DNA from: Thecamonas trahens ATCC 50062
Taxonomy: Eukaryota > Protista > Apusomonadida
Reading direction: 5' to 3'
Assembly: GCF_000142905.1 (NCBI RefSeq)
Contig: NW_013657671.1
Location: forward strand, 372,001-436,000
DNA: 64,000 nucleotides
The notes beneath the pieces are model-generated. The model made no database searches. It saw only the letters and a program-made list of their open reading frames with translations, and had not been told where the DNA came from. The position numbers and the translations under genes were made by a program. Each line of letters begins with the position of its first letter. Position 1 is the stretch's first letter. Shown piece by piece: positions 39,459 through 54,617 of this stretch.

Positions 39459-42400
39459 ATGGCTGAAGAAGCACCACCGCCAGTACCACCGGGTGTGGTC
39501 GACAAGTTCGCCCTCTTTACCATGGCTATCGACGACGTCGAGTCGCTCAACCTGTCGCTCGCACTGGGACCTCCGCCAGAGGCCAAGGAGGAGAGGAAGC
39601 AAGGACCAGGAGAAGCAGAGCGGGGAAAGGTCATCAACTTGGCAGATGCTATGCGCCGCTGGGCAAAGTTCTCGGCATCTGCCACTGTCATCCAGCGTGC
39701 TGTCCGCTCGTGGCTCGCCCGCCGCGGCTTCCGCGCGCGCGCCCCGCTGGAGATCATGGCAGCCAAGGCCGAGGCCGAGTCTGTGCTCCTCGCAGATCGC
39801 CGCGCTGCTGCGGTGAACGAGCTGATTGAGACCGAAGAGGCTTACCTCAACAAGCTCCGCCTGCTCCGTACCTTTTACATTGAGCCGCTCACCGACATGC
39901 TTGCAGAGTCCAAGCCGCTGCTCTCGGCCTCACAGCTTCGCAGCTTGACGTCCACCCTCGATCCGCTCCTCAAGCTCACCGAGACCACGCTTGGCAAGCT
40001 TCACGCAGCCGTTGAGGCGGCCGGCGGTGATCTGACGCGCGCCGCGGTAGGCGCTGCACTTGCCGAGCTCGTCCCCTACCTCAAACAGTACAAGGCGTAC
40101 GCCAACAACTACCAGTACGTCATGGCTGTGCTGGAGACGGCCAAGGCCGACTCGTCCGCCATGGCCAAGTTTCTTGACGATGCCTACCATGCCTCGGGCC
40201 GCAACCCGTACTCGATGCTCCTAATGCAGCCGATCCAGCGGCTGCCGCGGTACCTGCTACTGTTCAAAGTGGTTTTCAAAGCGACTCCCGCGACCCACCC
40301 CGACACCGTCCCTGTTAGCGACATCATCACTTCGCTCGAGGAAGTTCTCGTCGACGTCGACGCCGAGGTCTCACGCGCTCGCAACGTCAACACCATGCTC
40401 GCGCTGCAGGAGCGGCTGACCGGCGCGGCGCCCATCCTCGTCGCCGACTCCCGCGCGCTTGTCCACCAGGGCCTGCTTGTCCTGGCCTCGGGCGACGTTC
40501 GTGAGGCCTTTCTCTTTACCGACATGCTCCTGCTTTGCACGCAGGTCAAGTCGGGGCCCAAGCTCAAGGTCAAGGACGTCCTAGCTGTGCCCACCATGTA
40601 CGTCACCGGCCTGCCTGATGATGCCGAGGACAGATCAGAGCTTGGCTTCCGCATCGTCGCCGTCTCCAAAGTCATCACTGTCTTTGCGAGGAATGCTGAC
40701 GACCGCGCAGACTGGATCACCGCTGTCCTCACCCTCGTCGCCGACCACGTTCGCCGTGACCCCTCGCTCGTCGCCGCCCGCCGGCCGTCGCCCGAAGCCA
40801 GCGATGGCACAGGCAGTGCCAACATCCCACCGGCCCTTATTCCGTCGTCAGTCCACCCGACACCGTCGATTGAGCTGCCGGCGCTCGACGTCGACAACCT
40901 CCGCTCCATCTTTACCATCCGCTACCTCCGCGCCTCGGTCCTTGCCGAGTACGAGGGCGTGCTCTCCAAGCGCGGCGTCCGCAACACCAGCTTCCGCAAG
41001 CGAACCTTTATCCTCCTCGACAAGTTCCTCTACTACTTTAAGAGCACCAAAAAGGCGGCCGTACCTGCCGGTGTCATCCCGCTCACCCGTACCTCGCTTG
41101 TTCAGTCGCGCGAGTCGGCAAACTCGTCGCAGGGCGGGCCCGTCTTTTTGACATTGCACACAAGGAGCGGCGCACCTTTCACCTCCAGGCCCGCTCGTTT
41201 GCCGAGTATATCGACCTCAAGCAAGCTGTCCACAAGTCACTCGAGACCCCACTCAAGATCCCCGGCCCCGGCTTTGAGTTCCTACTCTCGAACATGGTGG
41301 GCAAGGATTGCACCAATGCCGTCGTCAACCAGGCCGTCCAGCAGCTCGCCGCCTTTACCCTCGCGCCAATCTCGGACAAGCGCTATACAATCATCAACCG
41401 CACTGGCCTAGACAACGTCGTAGGGGCGATCTGCCACGTCCTCACCACCACCGTTGCCGAGGACGCAGCCAAGTACGCATGTGTCTGCATCCGCAACCTG
41501 GCCCACTCGCGCGAGACTGCAGCCGCCATCCATGACGTCGCCGTCCCGTCGCTGATCTGGATCCTCCTCCGCACCGCACCCTACGTTACGCCGATCGTCA
41601 AGCGTGAGGCCGTCTATGCCCTTCTCCACATCAACACCCTCTCCCAGCCGATCCTCTACGCCGAGACCCGTGCCGAGTCGCTCTCCACGGCTGTACTCAA
41701 GTACCTTGCCTCTACCTCGCACGTCGCCGGCGACCCGCTCTCCATTGAGGTCGTTTCGGCCATGTTCGCCGACGTCGCGTCCAAGGCCTTCCGCCGCACC
41801 GCCGTCCTCAACAAGCCCAACTTTGCCAACGTGGTCACTACCCTTCTCCGCCTCTCTGACTACCCGGCAACTGCGGCCCATGCCGCATCGGCCCTCGGCT
41901 CGCTCGCCTCACACTCGACCATGTGCCAGCAGCTTCGTTCTGCCGGAAAGACCTCGCTGCTCGAACTCAACGCCGAGTGGGCCGCACTGTTGGTGAGCCA
42001 CCTCAGCTCGGACAAGATCTATCTCGTCCGGGCCGCGCTCCTCGCCATCCGCAACTTGATCTCGCGCTCGGTCGTACCGCGTGCCTCGGCCACCACCGCC
42101 GTCCGTCGCCTCCTTGCTGCCGGTCTCCTCCCGCAAGTTACCACCATTGCTCGTGGTGAGCACGAGACGGACGTCCGCAACGGCTGCCGCCTCCACGCCC
42201 TCGCCCTGCTTGTCTCGCTTACCGCCTACGACACGCCGATGACCTCGTTGCTGGACTCGGGCGGCCTCGAGCTTGTGCGGAGTGTGCTTGCCGACGTCTC
42301 CGCCGCTCTTGACTCTGCATCTGATGGCTCTGCGCTTGACGCGACGCTGATCAAGCTGCTGTGCCTCGGAGGTTCGAGCGGACCAAGCCGTATCTTGGAC

Positions 42401-43705
42401 ACAGCGCTGTTTGACGACCCCGACTACGAGCCAGGCCTGGTCTCTGGCGAGGCCGCAGGCTATGCGCTCGACCTCCTCACCCACCTCACGTCGACGCCAC
42501 TCTTCTCGGTAGCAGCGCTGCCGTCCTTGATGATGCCTGGCGGGCGGGCATCGTCGCTGGTTCCGGCCTCGGCCATACCCAATCTGGCCGACGCCGCCCT
42601 TGCCTTTGACCCATTGGCGCTCTGGGCGCTTCTCTCCCAGCTGGCCAAGAACTCCGTGCTGCCGATTAATGTCCGCAGCCGTGCTCTCGCCTCGCTGTCT
42701 CGCGGGCTCTCGATCGACTTTGGGGAGAGCCGCGCCGCCATCGCCGGCTCACTTGTAGACGATGACGAGCTCCTGCAGGTCATCGCAACAGCGCTGGACT
42801 GGGAGGCGGCTCTGGCACACGCCGCTGATGTAGGGTCGCTCACTGAGAGCACCTGCGTTTTGGCACCGGAGCGGCTCGACGCGGACGTCGTCGAGTTTCT
42901 GGTCAAGTACGAGGGCATGACCCACACGCCGGCCATTGTCGCCGCCCGTGATAGTGGGACACTCTTATCGTCGTTTACTGTTCCGCCACCAGTCCTGTTC
43001 CGCGGCAGCACTGTCGAGTCGCGCCACATGCTCTCAGCCATCCAGCTCGCCATCGCTGCAGCCGATACCATCGCCGCACTCTGGGCTTCTGTCACGCCGT
43101 CGAAGCAGGCTGTTCTTGGCAAGTTTGGCAGCCTCCTCATCGATGGTGTCCTCGAGGTCCTGCCCGAGTGCAAGCTCACCGTCCGCGTCCGCGTCGCTTT
43201 TCTTCGCGCCGTGGCAGCCATCCATGGTCACACTGCCTTCCGTCCCAACCTCGAGGCGCAAATACTGCGCGCTGTCCTCGACCACCCGCTCGGCTCATCG
43301 GAGGAAGGCTCTCGGGTCTCGGCCATGCTTGCGCTCCAGGACCTGCTCCGCGCGACCTCGTTGAACGCAACCAGCGATGCTGCTGGCGAGGTTGGCGGCA
43401 GCAGGGTGAACCCAGCCGAAGCTGTGCTTGCGTCGTTTGCGCCCGGCGCGGCGCCCGATCCCGGCGCCGGACTCGCCACTTACGCCGCCCTCACTGCTCG
43501 CGCCACGCCGGGCGCCAGCATTGTGCACACTGACATGGACACGGTTGTTATTAGCAGCCCTTACAATGCATGCGGACCGACCCAGATGTCTCTCTGCGTC
43601 GGTGACCGCGTCCTCGTTGTTCACCGCGCCTCGGCCATCTGGTGGTACGGCGTCTGCGGCAACCGCCGCGGGTACTTTCCAACGTCGGCCGTGAGCCTCG
43701 ACTAA
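39459..43705 (+). CDS. RhoGEF with IQ-DH-PH-PH-ARM-like-SH3 architecture; frameshift at T-run 41145-41149
   Basis: IQ 'IQRAVRSWLARR'; DH 'ELIETEEAY...QPIQRLPRYLLL'; second PH 'EGVLSKRG..FRKRTFIL..LYYFK'. One extra T gives VFFDIAHKERRTFHLQA, in frame with ORF 41294. SH3 'WWYG..RRGYFPTSAV'. Confidence 0.82.
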
Positions 43706-43910
43706 GCCATCCTCATAGACAATCGCTTAATATTCCCCTCCCGCATACTATCTTGCAAGCGCTAAACTGATCTTGCCCTGTAAAGCCTCGACCGCCGGCC
43801 TTTGAGGCCAGGCCGCACTCCGGTCGATGACACGTTTGCAATTGAAAGGAGGGTTTGGCGGCTGGCGCTGAGGCCAACCAGCCAACCGGCACCCGTCGCC
43901 GTTGACAGCC

Positions 43911-46900
43911 ATGGCCGAGGTACGGAGGACCGTTCCCCCCTGCTCTTCCCCCTCCCCCTACGTCCCCCTTGTACACACACACACACACACAATCACTCAC
44001 TCACTTACTCACCACACACGCACTAAACCTACAGGCCAAGTATCTAAGGACGCTGTGGGCGACGCTGGTGCAAACCCAGGACGCACTGGAGCTGCATGGC
44101 GAAGCGTCGTCGGGCGGAGCGGCGGCATTGTCGGCACTGGCAAGCATGGCGCTGACAACGGCAGCAACTGGGCTCACGGCCCCTCTGACAGAGCTGGGCC
44201 ACTTTGTTGACTTTGAGCTGGAGTCTTCCGTCTCGGCGGTTACCGCCTCGGAGTTTGCGCCAACCGAGGCCCAGGCTGCTGCGCTCCCACCGGTCTCGTT
44301 CTTCCCGCTCCTTCCCTACCCGCTCGCTGCTGCGCTCACCACTCTCCTCCCGGATAGCATGCTTCAGGCCGAGGACGACCTGCTGCGACTGCGGAACATC
44401 CTCATTCTGGTCGGTGTCCGCCTCAAGCGGGACGGATTTCTCTCGCAGGCGCTCGATGCCTTTCGCGCTGCGCTCGACGTGCCCGTCGGCGTGGAAGAGG
44501 TCCAGACTGGGGTGGCCTGGCTGCTGACACAGCGCCCAGCCGCGACGTCGACGTGTTGCCTGTAGCCACCGACAAGCCGTCCGCGTTGCTCTCGATGTGC
44601 ACCATTCTCTCACAGATGGGCGAGCACGACTCGGCGCTCTCGCACGCACAGGCTGCACTGGGCTGCATCCAACGGGCCTACGAGGCCTTTTCCCCACTCG
44701 ACATTACCGCCCGTGCTGGCTGGGACGCGTTTGCGGCCGACATGGATCCGACGCGATGGCTGCCGGCGACAGCACCGCCGTCGAACGCGTCGACGCTCAA
44801 CGTGGCCGCCATCGCTCTCTACAACATCGGGGTCGAGTACGAGTACCTTGGCCGACTCGAGGCTGCGCAGTCGTCTTACGCGCTTGGAGCTGCACTTGCG
44901 CGGCATCCCTTTGGTATCAAGGCACCGGTGCTCGATCAGCTACAGAGTGCGCTGGAGGATGTCAAGGCAACGGCGGCAGCAGCAGCGGCCGCGCGGCGTG
45001 TCCGAGCTCACTCGGGCCTCTCGTCACGGCGGGGAATGCGAAACACTGCGCGGCCGTCGTCAGCGGCGTCGTCACTGTCATCGACCTCGACGCGTCCGTC
45101 TTCCTCGGCACGCGCAGCACGTGCGCGGCGGCCAACGTCGGCCACGCGGACGCCGAAGCCACTGCTGCACAACCCGCTACAGATGAATGCCCAGGCCAAC
45201 GCGGCGGCTCCGTCGCCGTACAAGGTTGACCTGGTCCGCGAGTACCAGGCCGCCGTGGAGCGACCGCGATCACGGTCGGCTGCGCGGGGTGATGACTCAC
45301 GCCCGCTGGGCTACTCGCGACCAGCAAGTCACGAGGCCAACGATCGGCGCTCGAGCTCGCAGGCAAGGGCGAGGCCGAGACCACATTCGCGACCGCGGCC
45401 GGCGGCACGCCTCGACCCGATCCGACCGGCAACACAGCCGGTTTCGCCGAGTGTTCTCCACGATGACGAGCTCTCGCCGCGGTCTCGTGCGATGCTGGAG
45501 CGGGCGATGGCGCTGTCAACCGACTCGGACGATGAGACGACACGATCGGCGGCGTCGCGGATGACACTTGAGGGATACTCGGCGTGGTGCGAGCGGTATG
45601 CTGACCAGATCCAGGCCTCGCTGGCCAACGGCAAACCCGAGAGTGATGACGGCGACTCGGTCATGTCGGGTGCGTTTTCGTTCTTACCGGAAGATGTGCT
45701 CGTTGCCTCGCACAACTCGGAACGGCCGATTGTGTTCTCGATTGCTCGCTCGGGTGCTCCCTACAACTTTCTGGCAACACCTGCTCGATCGAGTGGTCAC
45801 GACGAGAAGAGCCGGGAGAGCGGCTCTGATGCCAAGCCGTTGTCATCATCAGCCGAGGCGTCGGGGCGGGGCGCCAAGCCCAAGAGCATCATGAAGCGGA
45901 CCAAGTCCAGGAGCGGTAGCAAGCGCAAGGGACAACCAGCCTTTGACCGAAAGCACTCGCGGACGACATCGTTTGCACCGTCGACCGGGACCGAGGTGCT
46001 CGACTCTGGACGGACACCGCACGTCATCAAGCGGCACTTTCTGTCGATCTCGGACTTTGTGCCACCCGCGGTGATGCGGCAAGACCAGATGCGGCAAAAG
46101 AAGGAAGAGCATGAGCAGCTGAACGAACAGAGCCGGATGGAGGAGCTGGTATCGTCGGCCACACTCGAGCTTCACATCCTGTACATGCAGTGCCGCGACC
46201 TGATGCCGCGGTCGGGGACGCAGACAAGCACATCGCCGCTCCTCCTCCTCACCGTGTCGGAAGACCGGGTCCGTGATGAGACCGAGGTCCGCAAGGGCAC
46301 GCTTGACCCGATGTGGCCAGAGCCGCGGGTGTACACCCGCATCTCACCCAAGGATACACTCAGTATCGAGGTTGTCGACTGGGACGCGGCCGACGAGGCG
46401 TCGATGTCGCTGGGTGTGATCTCGCTGGCCATGTCGGACATTGAGACCGACGTCCAGCACGACCTCTGGCTCCCGCTTGTTGGCTCCGAGACCGGGCTCC
46501 TTCACATTGTGCTCGCGCTCACGACGCCTGACGCACCGGCGTCGGTCCTCTCACGCGATAAGCTCACTGCCAATTTTAACGTCAAGGCCGATCCGGTGCC
46601 CATCGACATTTGCCTTGTCGGCGCCAAGGCGCTCGACCCGGACGGGCGTGTTGCTGCGGCCGTCGCCTCGCACACCCAGGCGGTGTGGCGTGACTCTGAG
46701 GCTAGCGAGGAGGGAGACAAGACCATGACTCGGCAGGCATCTCTCTCAACCATGTCTGTTGGCTCGCCGGAGCTGCAGGCAGTGGTCAAGGGCTTGGCGG
46801 CTACCATCAACCCTTCTGTCGAGCTCATTCTGGCCAACCAGATCTTCTGCACGCCGACGGCGAGCAAGACGGTTGCGCCGACGTGGAACACCAAATTCCT

Positions 46901-49900
46901 CTCGGACAACGTGCCGCCGACCGAGAAGATCGAGATCAACTGCTACAACTGGCAGACAGTCAAGGAGGGCCCACGCGCTGGCTCCATTGAGCCTGTACTC
47001 TTTGGCCACGCCTTTGTGGCGCTACAGCAGCTGAAGCGCAACACGGTCAACGATATCTGGGTTCCTGTTATGACCCCGATGCGCGGCTCGTCATCATCGT
47101 CGGGCGTTCGCGGTGAGGTCCGGCTGCAGATCACGTTTCCGCGGACAGCCTCGCTCTCGGCCGCGCTCACATCGGGTGGCTCGGGCGACAATATGTTTGC
47201 GACTAACAAGACTCATGTGCTCTCTGCGTCGTCGCACGATCTGGTGGCGGCACGAATCCAAGCCCAGGTCCTGATGCGCGATGGCGCAGCGCCGCAGCGG
47301 CGAAGTGACGGCGGCTCGGGCACCGAGTCGGGCTTCCAGCCACCGACACGAGTGGCGTTCAAGTCTGTGCCGAACTTTAACAGGCTCGGCCGGCGAAAGG
47401 GAAGCAAGGCACTTGCCCGCGAGGAGGAGCAGCGGCAGCAGATCCTTCTCAAGCAGCAGGAGGAGCGCAAGCGCCAGGCCACCAAAGCTCGCGCCAAGCG
47501 CATGGCGGCGGTCCTGGTTATGCAGGCGCACTTGCGCGGCATGGCTGCGCGGAGCAAGATGTATGCGCTCGGCAGCCGCGAGACCAACCGCTCCGAATCT
47601 AGCGAGTGGTCGGGCGAGTGGTCGTACGAGGAGGTCTCTATTGACAATTGGACGCCGATGGCCGAACTCTCGGACTCGGCCTCGCTCTCGTCGTCGTCGT
47701 TTTTGTCAGACGCACCGGTTGCAGGCGCGGACTTGTCGGGCTCGTACTCGGAAAGTGGAAGCGCCAGCGGAAGCGCCAGCGGAAGCGCCAGCGAGAGCAA
47801 GGGCGAGAGTCAGAGCGGATCCGAGGCTGCCTCGGCACTAGGCTCCAAGTCTGCCGTGCTTCCGAGCCGACCTGGCGCACCCGCACCACATGCAGTCTCA
47901 CCGCTTGATGCTGAGGAGGCTGCGGCGACTCGGATTCAGGCGTCGTGGAGGGGCCACCGCGGGCGGAAACAAGCGCGGGCGCGACGGCTAGTTGGAGGCG
48001 GCAAGCAGAGCGCGGGCACAGGCTCAAACGCGGGTTCGGGCCTCCGCCTCGACGTCGGCGCGGGCAATGCGTCGGCCGAAGAGCAGGCTGCGGCACTGGC
48101 CATCCAGGCGCGGTATCGCGGGTTTAAGGCGCGGCAGCGGACACGCGCGGCGCGACTCGATGTTCCTGTCGACGGATTTGGACCGGTGTCTGCGCCAGGG
48201 AGTGGACTCATCTGTGCTGTCGTTGTCTCGTATCCGCCGCTGCCGGCGGAGCAGCTCGTCGAATACGCATCGTTTGCCGTTGAGTACGAGCGCATTGTCC
48301 GTCACGCGCTCGCGCTGCACGTCCCTGGCTTCCTGGTCACCGACTGGAACGAGGCCGTGGGCCTCTTTGCTTCGCCATGGGCCGGCGTTGCGGCTGGTGC
48401 CGAAATTGCTGCGCAGCTCCGCGAGGCGTCGATTGATCTCGAGCTCATCGAGCCATTGATGGCGAGCGTAGGCGTGTATTGGGGCGACAAGGCGTTTTTC
48501 GCCGACACCACGCTTCCAGGAGTCACACGGTTTTTCGGCCGTGGCCCACTTGTGCACGGACCCGGCATGGTTGCGGCGAGGCAGCTGGCCGGCGTGGCAG
48601 AGCTTGGGCAAGTTGTTGTGTCAGGCAGCGTCGTTGCAGCGTACCGCGACGCGATCGACCGTCAGCCGACAGCAGAGCTCGCGCGCGAGCACCCGTTCCT
48701 GGCGACGAGTCCCGAATTTGAGGAGAAGCAGTCTGCGCTGCTGGGTGCCGAGAGCGCGAGCTATGGCGTTCTGCTCTCGATTCCGGACAAGGTGCGACCC
48801 GAGACCCAGCTGGGCATTCCACAGTCACCGGCGCCGAGCTCGGGGACGGGCGAGCTCGCGAGCTTGCGGATGGTGAGCTCACGATGGGTTGCGGCGGGAT
48901 CGGACGCTCGCGAGCGGGCCCGGGCCAAAGCGCGGTGGGCGGCGACACCGTTTGTGTGTGAGGAGACGTTTGCAGTTTGTGTCGGCGTCGACACAGACAA
49001 GCTGGTGAGCTCTGCGTCGCCGACAGTGGCCAGTGATGCGTGGCATGTGCTCTCGTCACAGGTCCAGTCGACGCTCGTGGCTGCCGGCGGGTCGCTCATC
49101 CGGCCGACGACGGCGGTGTTTGCTACTGCCGAGGCCGCAGTCTCTGCAGGCTGGCAAGTCGGTCATTTGTTTGATGAGATGGTGCGCGCGATTGAGTTGC
49201 ATGGTGCAGGCGAGGCGAGCCCAGGCGCCGAGACGAGCGACTCGAGCTCTGCGCTCCAGCGGATGCACGACTCGCTAGCGAGAGCAGTGAGCAAGGCGAA
49301 CACGATGTCAGCGCGGTCAGGTGCCGGGGCCAAGGCGCTGCTCGACGCGACATGCGCGGTGGGTGTGGTTTCTGGCTCGACGGTGAGGGCGGCGTCGGCC
49401 GGTCTTGTGTGGGGTCCGGCAGTATGGATGGCGTGTGCAGTGGCGCATCACCACCCGCGCAAGGAGATCAGGGATCGGATCGAGTGGCAAGTACCTGTTG
49501 TGCTCGGCGCTCAAGTCGCCGCGAGAGTGGGCAAGGCCGCCACCGACGCGCTCTCTGTCTTTGCTCCGCTGGCACTCGTCGAGGATACGCTGCTCGGTGG
49601 AGTGGTTCACACCACGGTTGTACCGGAAGAGGTGTCGCTTGTGGCAATGGACCCAGCACTAGGCAGCGGAACAGGCGAGGTGAATCTGCAAGTTGCACTT
49701 GTCAATGGCTCACTCAAGGGAGCCAAGGAAGAAGTTGTGCAGATGGGCAACGCAGTTTTTCTGGCCTCACCGCACACGGTCGTCTTTGCCGTCTTACACT
49801 CTGACGCACGGCTGGGCAACAAGTCCCGGGTGGTTCTGCACGCGGCGCAGGTGGTCAAGATGCGTGAAATTCTCGGCCCGGTGTGGGCAGCCTACGACTC

Positions 49901-52900
49901 GACGGCTGCGCTTGAGAACGAGCGGCTTTCGATGGCGGTGTTCTCGTCGCCTCCGCTGGCGCTTGCCGCAGCGCTGGAGGCGTCCAAGCTGGTCTCGCAG
50001 TTCAACCTCAAGACCCGTAAGGCGGACGACTTTGAGCTTGTGGTCGGCATTGGGGTTGCCGCGGGCGAGGGGTTGGTCTGCTCGTTTGACGAGGTGCTAG
50101 TCGCGGGAACACCCGCCGCGTGTGCATCGCTCCTGGCCGGTGCGTCCAACGGCGAAGTACTTGTGGCCGGCAACGTGCCGGGACTTGTGGCCAAGGCACT
50201 GCCACGGATCACATTCCGCGAGCAGCAGCGAGTAATCCAGGCCTCGACCGGGCGCGTGATGGCAAATAGCGATGCGACCAGCGTGGCTGCCAACGATGCG
50301 ATTGCCATGTTCGCGGCTACGGGAACACTCAAGCGGTACCGGACGTCGCTCGGCGGACCGGTGGCAGGGCGGTCGAGCTCACTGACGGCGGTGGCGGTCC
50401 GCGGCGGCAAGCCGTACCTCGAGCTCGTTGAGGTTGTGAGCAGGCGGATGCCGACGCCCAAGTCGGGAGCACCGACAGCCGACGAGGTGCGTGGGGTGGA
50501 GAAGAACGTGTGGGGGACGTACGGCTGCAAGGCGGTGTTTGTTGCGGTGGCGCTGTCGATGCCCGCCGCGTTCCACGGACGTGACCGCGTGCGGGCCCGG
50601 TTCCAGGTAATGGATAGCGTGAGCGGCGTTGAGGCGGCGGGCGAAGCAATCGGCGTGCTTGCCGGCGGCGGACCACACTCGCGGAGCGCGGGCCCTGTCT
50701 TTGTCTTTGGCGATGAGAGGGTTGCGCTCCGTTTCGCGGTTGGCGCCGCAGAAGTGCTGCGCCGGGCTTCGATTCCGTGCGATGGCCAAGTCGGCTCGGT
50801 CGTGGTCAGCTCCGGACGAGTGCTGGAGGTGCCGTCTCCGGTGGATCCGTCCCTGCGCGAGTGGATTGGCGAGCCACTGCAGGTTGTGCGCGAGCTTGCA
50901 GGCGACTGTGTCGCGCGCAACCGTGTCGGGGTGTGGTTGACACCCGAGGTTGCGGCTGCGTTGATGCCCGAGGGCGCTTCTGGCGCCGACGGCGTGTTCA
51001 TTTCGCTTGTGGCGGCTGAGGGCGGCGAGGCGTCGGGTGTCGAGGTGGTTCGTCTGGAGGCTGGCGAGAAGGTCATGGTTCTGCAGCGTGAATTATCGCT
51101 GGTGAGCGTGGTAGCAGATGCGGACAGTATGGCCGAGCGCGGTGGAGCGTCTGTGACGCTGGGGCGAACGCCGTCGACTGGGCTGGAGGGCAATGGTAGT
51201 GATGGCGACGACAGCGACGGTGACGACCACGAGCTCAAGACCGTGCTTGTGCTGGATATGACCGGGTTCATGGAGTATGAGGAGCGGGCGGCCGGTGGCG
51301 TACTGGGCTTTGCGGCGCGCATCGTGCAGATGCGGTGGCTGGTGCAGCCGTTGCTGACGTTGTACGGAGCCGAGCTTGTTGTTGCGGACGAGGACAACGT
51401 GTTTGCAGTGTTTGGCGAGTCGCATCGGGCTGTGGCGGCTGCGTTGGAGATTGTGCGTCTGGTGGCGATGTTCAACGCGCAAGAGGGCGTGGCGAGCGAC
51501 CCGAGCCGGAAGGCACAGTTCAAGGGCATCGGCGTGGCCAGCGGCGAGGCTGTGGTTTACGATGAGTTCCGGTCCCGGCTTTACGGAAGGGCCGCCGAGG
51601 TGGCGTTCCACCTTGCGGAGCGGGTGGCACACAACGGAGCAGTACTGCTCACAGCCGAGGTCCAGAGCGTTGTACAGAGCGCGACCGCGCTTGGCAAGGT
51701 CAACTACCTGGCGCAGACGACGGCGTACGACGGTGCAGCGCTCAAGTACTTTGTGGCCAAGGGCGGGCTGCTCAAGTACTCGGGCTCACTGAGCAAGGCG
51801 CTTGGAAGCGGGAGCGACGTAGCGGGCTCGTTTGCCGAGTATGTTGCAGCGCGGAGCAAGGCCGGATCAAGTGATGCACGCGCGGGTCTGGATGCTAGAG
51901 CGCGGGCTACGTTTGTGCGACGTGGGTGCGTGCTCGCACTGTCGATGGACCGGCCAGCGCTTGTGAGCTCCAAGGGCGTGTTTCGGTCGATTCGTGAGCT
52001 GCACGAGGTGTCTGTGGCGCTGGCGGCGATTGCGAGCAAGGTGGAGGCGGGCGTTCATCATGTGGCGCAGTTCCTTTGGCTGTTTGAGAGCCCGGCCAGC
52101 GCGGCAAGTGCTGCACTTGCGATGCACAAGAAGCTGGATAACGAGTTGTGCTCGGCACATGGGATTCGTGTCCGCGGCATAGGCATCGACGCAGGTGAGG
52201 TCCTGTTGTCTGTGAACGACGGCATGGCGTGGTCGCGTACGGTGAACGTGGCGCGCAAACTCGCGCGCGAAGCGTGCGCCGGGCTGGACGCTTGTCTGGC
52301 GGTGACGCGTGGCGCATTCGAGGCGGCACGAACGACGTTTGGCGATGTTGCCCTCGTCGAGGCACCAGTGACGGTTCTCGGGGAGGAGATGGAGGTTTTC
52401 TACCTTCGGAGCGCCCAGGCTTCGGCTGCGGCTGGGATTGAGTCGGTGGTGAGCGGAAGCAACGACGGGTTTGGCGTTGTAGCTGTGGACCTCGGCCTGC
52501 TATGCGAAGGTGGGAAGCTCGACGTGGCGCATGCGGTCTCTGTGCTTGCGATGGCACAGGAGTCTGTGGCGCGGGTGGCGAATGCGTACCAGACTCGCGC
52601 CGACTGGTGTGGATCGCGGGGCGTGGTGGTTGTGCCCGCGGCCGACGGCGAGCTGTACGACCAGACGTGCGTGGCGGTGGCGTGCGAGATTGTGCGTGCG
52701 CTTGAGGCTGTGAGCGAGCATGTGAACAAGCCATCGCTTCTGGTGCGCGGGGCCGGCGTGGGTGCTGTTGTTTCGCCAAACATGGTGTGGGTCCATGGCA
52801 GCGCTGGCGGCGGGGCTGTAGAGCGCGCGTGGCGACTCGGTCGCCTCGCGTCGCAGACCGGCGGCGGAGTGGCTGTGGATGCGGCGTTGGCGGCCATGGT

Positions 52901-53528
52901 CGAGCGCGAAAGCAAGCTCTCGACATCCGGGTTTGGCGAGCTTCAGCTGGCGCCGATGGGCGACGACGCAGTCCGAGTCTCGGGCGTGCTCGACCAGTAC
53001 CGGGCGGGGCTCCCCGAAGAGGCACTGTTTGCCGGATATGCAGGTGATGTGGGGGCGCTGCGGGAGCTCTCGCTGCGGGATCTCGCGCTGCTGCGGTACC
53101 GCAAGGGCGTCGATGTCCGGGCGCTCGACCGGGTCATCCGGGCTGGGTTTGTGGCGTCGGGCGTGATTGTGGACGCGGTCGCTGCTGTGGGGAGCGACGA
53201 TGGTTCAGCCGGGGAGGTCTCGCGACTTCGGGCGTGGGAGGAGGACGTGTTGACGCGGACGCCATCGCGGAAGGGCGAGCGGCTTGTGGTGAGCGGACCA
53301 GGCAAGGCGCTGTGGATCACTCACACTGAAGATGCCGGACACGAGCTCCTCGCACGTCTGGAGACACGAGTCTCGATGTATGACGGGCACGGCCCGCAGT
53401 TTGATCTCGGTCCGTTTGAGCGTGTATCGTCGCCGATTGTGATGGCAACGAAGCGCGGGGTTGCGGTTGGCGTGTGGCGCGGCTCTGTCGTGGTCGGCGA
53501 TGGCCTTTGTCTCGTCCGCGAGCGCTGA
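43911..53528 (+). CDS. Giant TPR-C2-C2-IQx3 protein with about eight tandem class III nucleotidyl-cyclase-like domains; exons 43911-43919 and 44035-53528; frameshift near 44509-44537
   Basis: Intron GTACGG...CTAAAC...CAG. TPR 'AIALYNIGVEYEYLG'; C2 'KGTLDPMW..IEVVDWD' and 'KTVAPTWN'; IQ 'IQASWRGHRGR' and 'IQARYRGFKAR'; cyclase 'VLVLDMTGF..DEDNVFAVF..GIGVASGE..LYGRAAEVAFHLAE'. Confidence 0.8.
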
Positions 53529-53619: not shown

Positions 53620-54617
53620 ATGGCTAGCGCAGCAGAGCAAAAGGCGTTTGCCCAGCTTGTGCTTGCCCTCTCCAACGTGGTCCTCACCAATGTCAAGTCA
53701 CGCGGCTCGGTCGACGTCGACGCAGTGGCCGGCACTCTCCGCGACAGGTTCTACAGCGACATGCCGAGAGAAGGTACGAGGAGAGGAGGAGGAAGGGTTG
53801 AAGGGAGGGATGGGCGGGAGAGGGAGGGGGAGGGGGAGGGAGGGTGTGTGTGTGGACGGGGTGGAGGGGGTGGAGGGGGTGGCGGGGGTGGCGGGGGAGG
53901 GAGCGACGGACAGGGGTCATTTCTGGTGCATGCATGTGGCGCGCGGCTATGAGTGATGGCCAGGGATGAGTTAGAGGAGATGGGGAGGGTGAGGGACTGA
54001 TGGGAATGCCTGTATGGGGATGGATAGAGTTTGTGGCGATGCGCGAGTCTGTGCTGGCGGTCTTGCGGCAAGGCGTGGCGGAGATCTGGTCGGTGACGCA
54101 GCTGGAGGAGGCGCTGGCACCGATGGATATGCCGGCATATCAGAAGAAGCTGTTTCTGAGAGTGTGGCATCGTCAGCAGGAAAAGATCCGGTTGGTTGTC
54201 TCCGAGGCGTCGCGGTTCGGTAACTCGCTGCTGGACATGTCGTGGCGCGTGGACGCGCTGTCGGCGTCCAAGGCGCGCGAGTCGCTCTCGGGTGCGACGT
54301 GCATTGTCGAACTTCTGGTCTCGAACGAGAACAAGGCGGCCGAGGCGCGGCGGGCGGCGGCGGCGGCAGCGATCATCCGCGCACGGTCGGACCAGTCTGT
54401 CGACGCCAAGGACGTGCCACCGCTCTCGGTCGCGGCCACCCACGACGTCGTCACGTTTGAGATGGACCAAGCGCAGCTGGAGCAGACCCTCCTTCAAGTC
54501 CGTGCCATCAAGTCGTTCATCTCATCTCAGACTGCTGGTGGGAGCGCTGCCAGCGCGCCCGATGCTGGGACCAGCGCCGAGCCGGACGTCGATGCTGGTG
54601 CCGCCGACGACGAGTAG
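53620..54617 (+). CDS. COMMD1: COMM domain protein, COMMD1-like; exons 53620-53773 and 54028-54617
   Basis: 'FYSDMPREEF', 'W..QQEKIR', COMM domain 'LLDMSWRVD..CIVEL..VTFEMD..L..I'. Intron GTACGA...TAG in frame. Confidence 0.78.

What the first reader, a model, noticed from the sequence alone, without database searches (positions are those of the whole stretch)
43911..53528. Giant Ca2+-sensor-type protein carrying four tandem two-domain cyclase-like modules (8 domains), mostly degenerate
After TPRs, two C2 domains and three IQ motifs, the last ~1,770 aa repeat the class III cyclase signature (hydrophobic beta strand; 'xF.(S/T)...A...A'; 'GIG(V/I)..G'; 'G.....A..LA'; 'G.V(L/V)') about eight times: ~48200-48780, 48960-49600, 49770-50350, 50520-51110, 51230-51780, 51920-52410, 52460-53000 and a partial copy at 53140-53528. 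Domains 3, 5 and 7 end in a shared motif (GTLKRYRTSL, GGLLKYSGSL, GVLDQYRAGL). Even domains are preceded by a shared helix (ARAKARWAATPF, RGVEKNVWGTY, RAGLDARARATF, RALDRVIRAGF). This points to a two-domain module duplicated four times. Only domain 5 keeps both metal Asp residues (LDMTGF...DED). Domain 6 keeps 'TVNVARKL', the transition-state half. Domains 5 and 6 could therefore form one active pseudo-heterodimer, as C1/C2 do in mammalian adenylyl cyclases, flanked by three inactive pairs. I know of no described cyclase with this architecture. It is a candidate Ca2+/calmodulin-gated, membrane-recruited cyclase with pseudo-cyclase regulatory modules.
Basis: partly seen in the sequence, partly recalled or inferred. 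Interest (0 to 1): 0.85.

Follow-up and report, generated by a model that had tools for sequence, protein, structure and literature searches.

The report
Giant protein with mostly dead cyclase modules
One gene of the marine flagellate Thecamonas trahens encodes a roughly 3,170-residue soluble protein in which TPR, C2 and IQ motifs are followed by three and a half tandem two-domain cyclase-type modules, of which only one keeps the catalytic residues; this repeated layout turned up in none of the papers I could search.

Summary
After TPR repeats, two C2 domains and three IQ motifs, the last ~1,770 residues form an alternating array of two cyclase-homology domain types, A-B-A-B-A-B-A-(B).

- **Support:** domains 3, 5 and 6 are strongly supported, domains 1, 2 and 7 clearly, domain 4 weakly. 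Domain 8 is unproven.
- **Family:** the A-B module belongs to an uncharacterised branch of class III nucleotidyl cyclases. A supplies two metal-binding Asp. B supplies Asn and a Lys where other cyclases have Arg. The branch occurs in marine protists and some bacteria.
- **Structure:** module 3 (domains 5+6) models confidently as a closed C1/C2-like pseudo-heterodimer.
- **Catalytic residues:** module 3 is the only module that keeps all four. Its B half has lost most other family-conserved residues around them.

My reading is one possibly live centre flanked by dead modules. I put catalytic activity at about 50%.

- The gene has a short first exon and an intron, and the assembly lacks one G after 44513.
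- The first C2 keeps only 2 of 5 Ca2+ ligands.
- Poly-module relatives exist in the same genome. The scan had already noted one on another contig (s1-749522).

I found no RNA evidence and no orthologue.

The parts
43911..43919 (+). Probable exon 1 (start codon plus two codons)
   Evidence: The ATG is followed directly by GTACGG. Splicing to 44035 keeps the frame of the next open frame. This is inferred; no RNA data exist.
43920..44034 (+). Probable intron (GT...AG, with a CA repeat)
Evidence: Read from the sequence. DNA contigs cover it, so the sequencing runs are not RNA.
44035..44513 (+). Exon 2, first part, in the frame of ORF 43969..44565, up to the assembly indel
   Evidence: ORF list. 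One G is missing after 44513 in the assembly, as 3 of 3 covering contigs show. Pfam finds nothing significant in this piece.
44514..53528 (+). Rest of the coding sequence, including the stop
   Evidence: It lies within the 2991-codon open frame. No continuation of domain 8 is found downstream in any frame. The next gene, a COMM-domain protein, starts at 54000.
44580..44891 (+). TPR repeats
   Evidence: TPR_12 E 4.4e-6 and TPR_1 E 1.3e-5, both below the curated cut-offs.
46170..46478 (+). C2 domain 1, Ca2+ ligands mostly lost
   Evidence: PF00168 61.8 bits. The alignment to PKC gamma/alpha C2 shows both loop-1 Asp replaced, and the first two of the three loop-3 Asp kept (DWD).
46797..47066 (+). 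C2 domain 2
   Evidence: PF00168 29.9 bits, E 6.6e-7.
47520..47552 (+). IQ motif 1
   Evidence: Regex match. Pfam IQ 40 bits with 3 stretches.
47934..47966 (+). IQ motif 2
48102..48134 (+). IQ motif 3, just upstream of module 1
48222..48680 (+). Domain 1, A-type cyclase-homology domain, catalytic Asp lost
   Evidence: hhalign to the A profile 94.7%, E 6e-8. The two-domain module HMM spans ORF residues 1224-1544 with E 6e-10.
48900..49472 (+). Domain 2, B-type, dead, with an insertion of about 55 residues
   Evidence: hhalign to the B profile 69%, E 4e-5, colinear over 142 columns. The Asn and Lys positions hold W and A.
49770..50255 (+). Domain 3, A-type, dead
   Evidence: HMM E 5e-16 and hhalign 98.8%. 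The second Asp position holds R.
50505..50942 (+). Domain 4, probable B-type, dead
   Evidence: hhalign to the B profile 35%, E 4e-4, colinear over 126 columns, and it prefers B over A. The Asn and Lys positions hold Q and E.
51228..51752 (+). Domain 5, A-type, both metal Asp kept (codons 51255-51257 and 51393-51395)
   Evidence: phmmer to PDB 3mr7 gives E 8e-5 with both Asp aligned. Key positions read DGFD. The AF2 model matches Ma1120 with Z 20.9 and rmsd 1.8 A.
51840..52292 (+). Domain 6, B-type, keeps Asn (52245-52247) and Lys (52257-52259)
   Evidence: N340 and K344 are invariant in 31 sequences. The flanking family motif is lost.
52458..52976 (+). Domain 7, A-type, probably dead
   Evidence: hhalign 85.8%, E 5e-6. 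The AF2 model of this part has pLDDT 70-93 and matches cyclase domains with Z 17-18 and rmsd 2.1-2.5 A. The register of the Asp positions is ambiguous.
53106..53525 (+). Domain 8, putative truncated B-type copy, unproven
   Evidence: Only the leading helix matches the B profile (hhalign 0.8%). AF2 pLDDT is 25-55. The protein ends before the Asn/Lys helix would begin.

Best explanation
This is a single gene of Thecamonas trahens for a soluble protein of about 3,170 residues. TPR repeats, a long disordered stretch, two C2 domains and three IQ motifs are followed by three and a half tandem A-B cyclase-homology modules.

Each A-B module descends from a branch of class III nucleotidyl cyclases. In that branch the two halves fold back on each other as the C1 and C2 halves of animal adenylyl cyclases do, and form one active site. 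A gives the two metal-binding Asp. B gives the transition-state Asn and a Lys in place of the usual Arg.

In this protein only module 3 (domains 5+6) keeps these four residues, and the other modules have lost them. So the protein has at most one catalytic centre.

I think it most likely that module 3 still binds metal-NTP and works as a cyclase of unknown base specificity. The dead modules would then serve as structural or regulatory partners, and the IQ/C2/TPR part would supply regulation and localisation.

Shown: the architecture, the homology, the predicted pseudo-heterodimer, and the pattern of kept and lost residues.
Inferred: activity, the role of the dead modules, calmodulin binding, and the exon 1/intron model.

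The confidence given (0.5) is for the full statement, including activity of module 3. For the architecture and the 'at most one centre' part alone I would give about 0.9.
For: - **One gene:** a 2991-codon open frame. One assembly indel after 44513 joins the upstream frame to it.
- **Homology:** domain 5 matches PDB 3mr7 at E 8e-5. The family profile matches 3mr7 at 3e-12, Ma1120 at 1e-9, and bPAC/OaPAC-type photoactivated cyclases, Cya2, sGC beta and a uridylate cyclase more weakly. Relatives pass the PF00211 cut-off.
- **Structure:** the AF2 model of module 3 has pLDDT 88.9 and pTM 0.88. It aligns as one rigid body to single-chain C1+C2 of AC5, AC9 and AC8 (Z 23-25, rmsd 3.1 A over about 293 residues). 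It also aligns to human soluble AC (Z 21-22) and to the P. aeruginosa cyclase-like ATP-binding protein 6yii (Z 23.4).
- **Family signature:** 143 of about 160 strong A domains have Asp+Asp, and 75 of about 89 strong B domains have Asn+Lys.
- **Retention in module 3:** it reads DGFD plus N and K. Yet domain 5 sits on a branch of 2.4 changes per site against a median of 0.73. Keeping all these residues at that divergence argues for selection on the site (my inference).
- **Alternating order of the other domains:**
- **A parallel case:** the metagenomic relative P0002 also has one intact module between two degenerate ones.
- **Soluble:** no convincing transmembrane segment.
Against: - The B half of module 3 keeps only 15 of 27 family-conserved columns. 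It has lost the H, T, G, D, P and S residues that flank Asn and Lys.
- PF00211 does not reach its cut-off on the window protein itself.
- All four A-type domains are the fastest-evolving in the family tree. That fits relaxed constraint.
- No orthologue was found, so conservation of this gene cannot be measured.
- No RNA run holds the gene.
- No member of this cyclase branch is known to me to have been assayed.
- The base-specifying residues could not be mapped.
Confidence: 0.5

Rival explanations
1. The whole array is catalytically dead. The protein is a pseudo-cyclase scaffold. Module 3 at most binds a nucleotide without turning it over, as the P. aeruginosa cyclase-like ATP-binding protein is described to do by its PDB title.
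For: - Most family-conserved residues around Asn/Lys in domain 6 are lost.
- All domains of this protein sit on very long branches.
- Six or seven of the eight domains lack catalytic residues.
- The model matches 6yii as well as it matches true cyclases (Z 23.4).
Against: All four canonical catalytic positions, plus the adjacent conserved G and F, survive in exactly one module despite heavy divergence. That is hard to explain without selection on metal-NTP chemistry.
Confidence: 0.38
2. One reading: a Ca2+/calmodulin-gated cyclase that the C2 domains recruit to membranes in response to Ca2+. This is a narrower version of the best explanation, so its odds lie within that one's.
For: - Three good IQ motifs lie directly upstream of module 1.
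- Two C2 domains pass the Pfam cut-off.
- A canonical calmodulin gene exists in the genome.
Against: - C2 domain 1 keeps 2 of 5 Ca2+ ligands.
- From general knowledge, IQ motifs often bind calmodulin without Ca2+.
- No binding test could be run.
- Activity itself is unproven.
Confidence: 0.15
3. The long frame is an assembly or annotation artefact that merges several genes, or it is a decaying pseudogene.
For: - The assembly has at least one single-base error inside this gene.
- No protein with these boundaries is on record.
- There is no RNA evidence.
Against: - 2991 codons run without a stop.
- Independent low-coverage DNA contigs are colinear with the window over 43700-49699, and their only consistent difference repairs the frame.
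- The domain order is regular to the end, and the neighbouring genes are distinct.
Confidence: 0.03

Closest known systems
Mammalian membrane adenylyl cyclases (C1/C2 catalytic core of AC5, AC8, AC9)
   Same: Two unlike cyclase-homology domains in one chain form a pseudo-heterodimer with one active site. The first half gives the two metal Asp and the second gives the transition-state Asn. The module 3 model aligns with Z 23-25 and rmsd about 3.1 A.
   Different: There are no membrane domains. Lys replaces the transition-state Arg. The module is repeated three and a half times, and sequence identity is only 14-15%.
Soluble adenylyl cyclase (ADCY10), tandem C1-C2
   Same: A soluble tandem C1-C2 on one chain within a very large multidomain protein. 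The model aligns with Z 21-22 and rmsd about 3.6 A over about 288 residues.
   Different: sAC has one module at the N-terminus. Here the modules are C-terminal and repeated, and identity is 13%. Bicarbonate-site residues were not examined.
P. aeruginosa class III adenylyl cyclase-like ATP-binding protein (PDB 6yii)
   Same: A tandem cyclase-like pair in one chain. It gave the longest alignment and the highest identity of the top hits (Z 23.4, 305 residues, 17%). Its title describes an ATP-binding, cyclase-like protein, which is a precedent for a non-catalytic module.
   Different: There was no detectable sequence match at E 0.01 or better with the family profile. It is a single module. I could not find its paper in the library.
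Small bacterial class III cyclases (Ma1120, S. pomeroyi 3mr7) and Pycsar PycC cyclases
   Same: Ma1120 and 3mr7 are the best sequence and single-domain structure matches. The ~200-residue bacterial members of this branch carry Asp, Asp, Asn and Lys in one domain. One of them hits PADLOC PycC models at 3.5e-14.
   Different: Those are single-domain proteins that work as homodimers. The window protein gives no PycC hit, and no Pycsar-type neighbours were seen near two bacterial members.
Other poly-module proteins of the same branch (T. trahens AMSG_03955 = P0001; metagenomic P0002, P0003, P0006; the giant array on contig C43)
   Same: The same A-B module repeated 2 to 5 or more times in one chain. 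P0002 has one intact module between degenerate ones.
   Different: None has the TPR-C2-IQ front part. P0001 is listed by UniRef as a GOLD domain-containing protein, though Pfam gave no hit on it. The C43 protein keeps the catalytic signature in most modules. The window protein is the most diverged.

Membership tests
Class III nucleotidyl cyclase (cyclase-homology domain, PF00211) | Significant sequence similarity to known cyclase-homology domains | tested here: met
   Domain 5 matches 3mr7 at E 8e-5. The family profile matches 23 PDB cyclase sequences, the best at 3e-12. Relatives pass the PF00211 cut-off. The window protein itself stays below it (E 0.025 on domain 6 only).
Class III nucleotidyl cyclase (cyclase-homology domain, PF00211) | The cyclase-homology fold | tested here: met
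   Domain 5 of the module 3 model matches Ma1120 with Z 20.9 and rmsd 1.8 A over 158 residues. The domain 7 model matches cyclase domains with Z 17-18. Domains 1-4 and 8 were not modelled, or were not modelled with confidence.
Class III nucleotidyl cyclase (cyclase-homology domain, PF00211) | Head-to-tail dimer or pseudo-heterodimer that forms the active site at the interface | tested here: met
   The predicted model of domains 5+6 aligns as a rigid body to C1+C2 of AC5, AC8 and AC9 and to sAC. This is a prediction, not an experiment.
Class III nucleotidyl cyclase (cyclase-homology domain, PF00211) | Two metal-binding Asp | tested here: met
   Met in domain 5 only: ORF residues 2235 and 2281. 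Lost in domains 1 and 3. Ambiguous in domain 7.
Class III nucleotidyl cyclase (cyclase-homology domain, PF00211) | Transition-state Asn and Arg (Asn-x-x-x-Arg) | tested here: not met
   Asn is kept in domain 6, but the Arg position holds Lys. This is invariant in the 31-sequence family alignment. 3mr7 shows the usual Asn...Arg at the corresponding place in its own domain (alignment). Domains 2 and 4 have neither residue.
Class III nucleotidyl cyclase (cyclase-homology domain, PF00211) | Base-specifying pair (Lys/Asp for ATP, Glu/Cys for GTP) | tested here: inconclusive
The equivalent positions could not be assigned.
Class III nucleotidyl cyclase (cyclase-homology domain, PF00211) | Cyclase activity | not testable with these tools
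   This needs a biochemical assay.
Tandem A-B branch with the Asp,Asp / Asn,Lys signature (unnamed; marine protists and some bacteria) | A-then-B order with Asp10/Asp54 in A and Asn134/Lys138 in B (profile numbering) | tested here: met
   Module 3 reads DGFD and N..K. 207 library representatives match at E 0.001 or better. Sources include MMETSP transcriptomes, Symbiodinium and Crypthecodinium, and bacterial MAGs.
Tandem A-B branch with the Asp,Asp / Asn,Lys signature (unnamed; marine protists and some bacteria) | Conserved B-domain motif around the site (H115; T125, H128-W-G-D-P before Asn; S before Lys) | tested here: not met
   Domain 6 keeps only W, V, N, K and L of this stretch, and 15 of 27 conserved B columns overall.
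Ca2+-binding C2 domain (PKC/synaptotagmin type) | Five acidic Ca2+ ligands in loops 1 and 3 | tested here: not met
   In the alignment of C2 domain 1 to PKC gamma/alpha, both loop-1 Asp are replaced and the first two of the three loop-3 Asp (DWD) are kept. C2 domain 2 could not be aligned well enough to judge.
Calmodulin-regulated cyclase (AC1/AC8-like regulation) | Direct calmodulin binding that changes activity | not tested
   Three IQ motifs are present.

The most novel reading that the evidence does not exclude
Thecamonas and other marine protists carry an undescribed eukaryotic branch of class III cyclases, with Asp,Asp / Asn,Lys and affinity to small bacterial, PycC-like cyclases. This branch is built into poly-module arrays. 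In this protein one live module sits among three dead ones and is wired to IQ, C2 and TPR parts. The dead modules would act as allosteric nucleotide-binding or partner-binding regulators of the live one. The product might not be cAMP or cGMP.
Probability: 0.2. Interest if true: 0.75.

Novelty: new variant of a known kind. Interest (0 to 1): 0.6.

Why it matters
Every described cyclase that I know of has one catalytic dimer or pseudo-dimer per polypeptide. My library searches turned up none with more, though they returned little that bears on the question. Chains with three to eleven such modules, mixing live and dead copies, would be a new way to build a second-messenger enzyme. The dead copies could work as built-in regulators, as pseudokinase domains do.

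The branch is also found in dinoflagellates and other marine protists. None of its members that I looked up carries a specific name, and I know of no assayed member, so its product is unknown. Apusomonads are a sister group of animals and fungi, so their signalling repertoire bears on how that repertoire evolved.

This gene is the most eroded member of the branch. The intact paralogues in the same genome are the better entry point for experiments.

Tried and rejected
- **Self-BLAST of the protein:** no off-diagonal hit. The repeats are visible only to profiles.
- **Pfam on the whole protein and on the eight segments:** no PF00211 hit above the cut-off.
- **Homologue searches:** region 1200-2991 gave only the paralogue P0001. 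Region 1-1200 gave nothing. Module 4 gave nothing. These blanks apply only to proteins of 0.55-1.75 times the query length.
- **JGI metagenome scan with residues 1735-2991:** no relative.
- **Own-genome search with module 4:** only itself. With module 2: paralogue hits on domain 3 only.
- **Exact look-up of three possible Met starts:** not on record.
- **RNA evidence:** no RNA run holds the gene. The four runs laid are low-coverage DNA contigs.
- **Iterated profile search:** the A and B profiles merged, and domains 4 and 8 did not become significant.
- **AF2 of module 4** (alignment covering domain 7 only): domain 7 folded, but domain 8 stayed at pLDDT 25-55, which is inconclusive.
- **Continuation of domain 8 downstream in other frames:** none.
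- **Tree of A-type domains:** the window's domains sit on very long branches, so whether the four modules arose by internal duplication stays unresolved.
- **NCBIfam:** no specific family. **PADLOC:** no hit for the window module.
- **ESM Atlas:** busy at five attempts.
- **Complex prediction** (IQ region with the calmodulin C-lobe exon): tool unavailable, nothing folded.
- **Rejected match:** P0063 is a cadherin-repeat protein and the match is spurious.
- **Joined sequence:** the spliced and frame-corrected N-terminus was never joined. The exon 2 piece and the long ORF were searched apart, by reference.
Full report
**Organism and gene model**

The window is contig C9:372001-436000 of the scanned genome. 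The paralogue P0001 is named by NCBI as AMSG_03955 of Thecamonas trahens ATCC 50062. Its key residues recur in an open frame on contig C16 of the same genome. Earlier notes of the scan name the same organism.

The finding lies in one open frame, 44553..53528 on the + strand, 2991 codons long. At 64% G+C I estimate the chance of such a frame at about 1e-35.

The sequence explains why:
- The ATG at 43911 is followed after three codons by GTACGG.
- A CA-repeat tract then ends in CTACAG at 44034.
- From 44035 a different frame is open as far as 44565.

I read this as a short exon 1 and a 115-nt intron. This is inferred.

That frame and the long ORF are joined by one G that the assembly lacks after 44513. 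All three independent contigs that cover the site carry the extra G. A second indel, at 45961, is seen in only one of three contigs, and I ignore it. The four runs cover the intron, so they are DNA. No RNA run holds the gene.

The exon 2 piece and the long ORF were searched apart by reference. The implied product has about 3,167 residues.

The neighbours on both sides are distinct genes:
- Upstream, the open frames end in an SH3 domain with a stop at 43705.
- Downstream, a COMM-domain gene starts at 54000.
- No continuation of the last domain exists downstream in any frame.

**Front part of the protein**

- Pfam finds TPR matches below the cut-off (E 4e-6 and 1e-5), two C2 domains (61.8 bits over both copies, 29.9 bits for the second copy alone) and three IQ stretches (40 bits).
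- The stretches between these domains are rich in S, A, R and P.
- No convincing transmembrane segment is present.
- Aligned to PKC gamma and alpha, the first C2 has both loop-1 Ca2+ ligands replaced. It keeps the first two of the three loop-3 Asp. A Ca2+-sensor role therefore has no support there.
- Calmodulin binding to the IQ motifs is a reasonable inference but was not tested.

**The repeat array**

Self-BLAST sees nothing. The paralogue P0001 holds three copies of a ~340-residue unit, and each aligns to ORF residues 2230-2574.

An HMM of that unit finds four places in the window protein: 1224-1544 (E 6e-10), 1743-1900, 2226-2579 and 2705-2792. The two halves of the unit are homologous to each other (hhalign 97%).

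A full-library search with residues 2226-2580 gave 207 representatives at E 0.001 or better. Many are proteins of 400-550 residues that match over the whole unit.

I built enlarged profiles from 183 A-type and 114 B-type domains. The eight segments then fall in strict alternation:
- d1: A, 94.7%
- d2: B, 69%
- d3: A, 98.8%
- d4: B, 35% (E 4e-4)
- d5: A, 99.8%
- d6: B, 99.1%
- d7: A, 85.8%
- d8: not significant
- controls: 1% or less

The extended alignments of d2 and d4 are colinear with the whole B domain. That of d8 is colinear but not significant, and it stops where the protein ends, just before the helix that would carry Asn and Lys.

I folded module 4 with an alignment that covers only d7:
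- d7 came out as a cyclase fold, with pLDDT 70-93 and Z 17-18.
- d8 stayed at pLDDT 25-55.

So seven of the eight domains are supported, and the eighth is a plausible truncated copy.

**What the module is**

Sequence evidence:
- Domain 5 alone matches the S. pomeroyi cyclase 3mr7 at E 8e-5, with both metal Asp aligned.
- The family profile matches 23 solved class III cyclase sequences.
- Several relatives pass the PF00211 cut-off.

Structure evidence:
- The AF2 model of domains 5+6 has pLDDT 88.9 and pTM 0.88.
- It aligns as one rigid body to chains that hold both C1 and C2: AC5 (Z 24.8, rmsd 3.1 A, 293 residues), AC9 and AC8.
- It also aligns to human soluble AC (Z 21-22) and to the P. aeruginosa cyclase-like ATP-binding protein 6yii (Z 23.4).
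- Single-domain cyclases match domain 5 at Z about 20-21 and rmsd 1.8-2.1 A.

**The branch and its signature**

In the 31-sequence alignment the Asn and a Lys four residues later are invariant, and the two Asp are nearly so. Across all strong domains, 143 of about 160 A domains have Asp+Asp, and 75 of about 89 B domains have Asn+Lys. The Lys stands where 3mr7 and other cyclases have the transition-state Arg (alignment, plus general knowledge of class III cyclases).

Members occur in several settings:
- MMETSP transcriptomes, Symbiodinium and Crypthecodinium.
- Bacterial contigs and MAGs of Myxococcales, Verrucomicrobia, Anaerolineales and others.
- Bacterial proteins of about 200 residues that carry all four residues in a single domain.

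One such bacterial protein hits PADLOC PycC models at 3.5e-14. No Pycsar-type neighbours were seen.

I found no specific name for the branch. Four library searches returned no paper that describes it or a poly-module cyclase. Two further searches were uninformative: one for the 6yii paper found nothing, and one was mis-specified.

**State of this protein's modules**

Only module 3 reads DGFD in A and N..K in B. The other domains read as follows:
- Domains 1 and 3 have lost the Asp.
- At the Asn and Lys positions, domain 2 has W and A and domain 4 has Q and E.
- Domain 7 has an Asp at the end of the first strand in the model. The second Asp position depends on the register, which differs between MAFFT and the model. 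Its putative partner lacks the Asn/Lys helix altogether.

Module 3 keeps 37 of 58 family-conserved columns: 22 of 30 in A and 15 of 27 in B. The B losses cluster around Asn and Lys.

In a tree of A-type domains, the window's domains have the longest branches: 6.5, 5.6, 4.1 and 2.4 changes per site against a median of 0.73.

I weigh these facts as follows. Keeping all catalytic positions in one module at such divergence points to selection on that site. The erosion around it points to changed or reduced function. I put metal-NTP binding at about 0.7 and cyclase activity at about 0.5.

**Relatives with many modules**

The genome has 37 matches to the module at nine or more loci.
- A single-module ORF on C36 and a two-module ORF on C31 are fully intact.
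- A giant array on C43 keeps the signature in most modules.
- P0001 has three degenerate modules.
- The metagenomic P0002 has one intact module between two degenerate ones.
- P0003 has five or more modules.

Module position is partly conserved between paralogues. Third modules of P0001 and P0002 group together, and so do the first and second modules of C18 and P0006. None of these relatives shares the TPR-C2-IQ front part.

**Verdict**

The Ca2+-sensor and calmodulin-gating parts are not supported or not tested, and the layout is a family trait, not a one-off.

This is a new variant of a known kind of enzyme. It is interesting mainly as one member of an undescribed poly-module cyclase family.

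Noticed in passing
window 44513/44514: The assembly lacks one G here. All three DNA contigs that cover the site carry it, and it restores the reading frame of the gene.
   Followed up: yes
window 54000-54617 (+): A 205-residue ORF encodes a COMM-domain protein (PF07258, 24.8 bits). It bounds the 3' end of the cyclase-array gene.
   Followed up: partly
G000:C43:277000-288000 (loci L003-L006, L010): A giant poly-module cyclase lies in open frames of 3130 and 2161 residues. Most of its modules keep the full Asp,Asp / Asn,Lys signature and the flanking motif. It is a better target for activity assays than the window gene.
   Followed up: partly
G000:C36:179280-180599 (L002) and G000:C31:226355-229170 (L001, L011, L012): These are intact one-module (587-residue ORF) and two-module (1166-residue ORF) paralogues of the same cyclase branch.
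   Followed up: partly
P0095, P0158/P0161 (bacterial, about 200 residues); loci L031, L032: Single-domain bacterial members of the branch carry Asp, Asp, Asn and Lys in one domain. P0095 hits PADLOC PycC (Pycsar cyclase) models at 3.5e-14. No cyclic-nucleotide effector gene was seen next to P0095 or P0161.
   Followed up: partly
L013:6001-7242 (bacterial metagenome contig): The stand-alone two-domain member P0004 (413 residues) sits directly after a PAS-GAF histidine kinase/response-regulator hybrid gene.
   Followed up: no
L025:1492-1674:- (G000:C35): This is the last exon of a canonical calmodulin gene (C-lobe, EF-hands 3-4), preceded by a TG-repeat intron. An intronless calmodulin-like gene with four EF-hands lies at L026:1267-1758:-.
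   Followed up: no
window 39459-43705 (+): The upstream open frames carry IQ, RhoGEF and two PH domains, then ARM-like repeats and an SH3 domain. This is a separate gene that ends at 43705. The scan noted it as s1-754417.
   Followed up: partly
window 48666, 48950, 48974 and other sites: Single-base differences between the window and some but not all of the low-coverage DNA contigs of one sample. They could be alleles or read errors.
   Followed up: no
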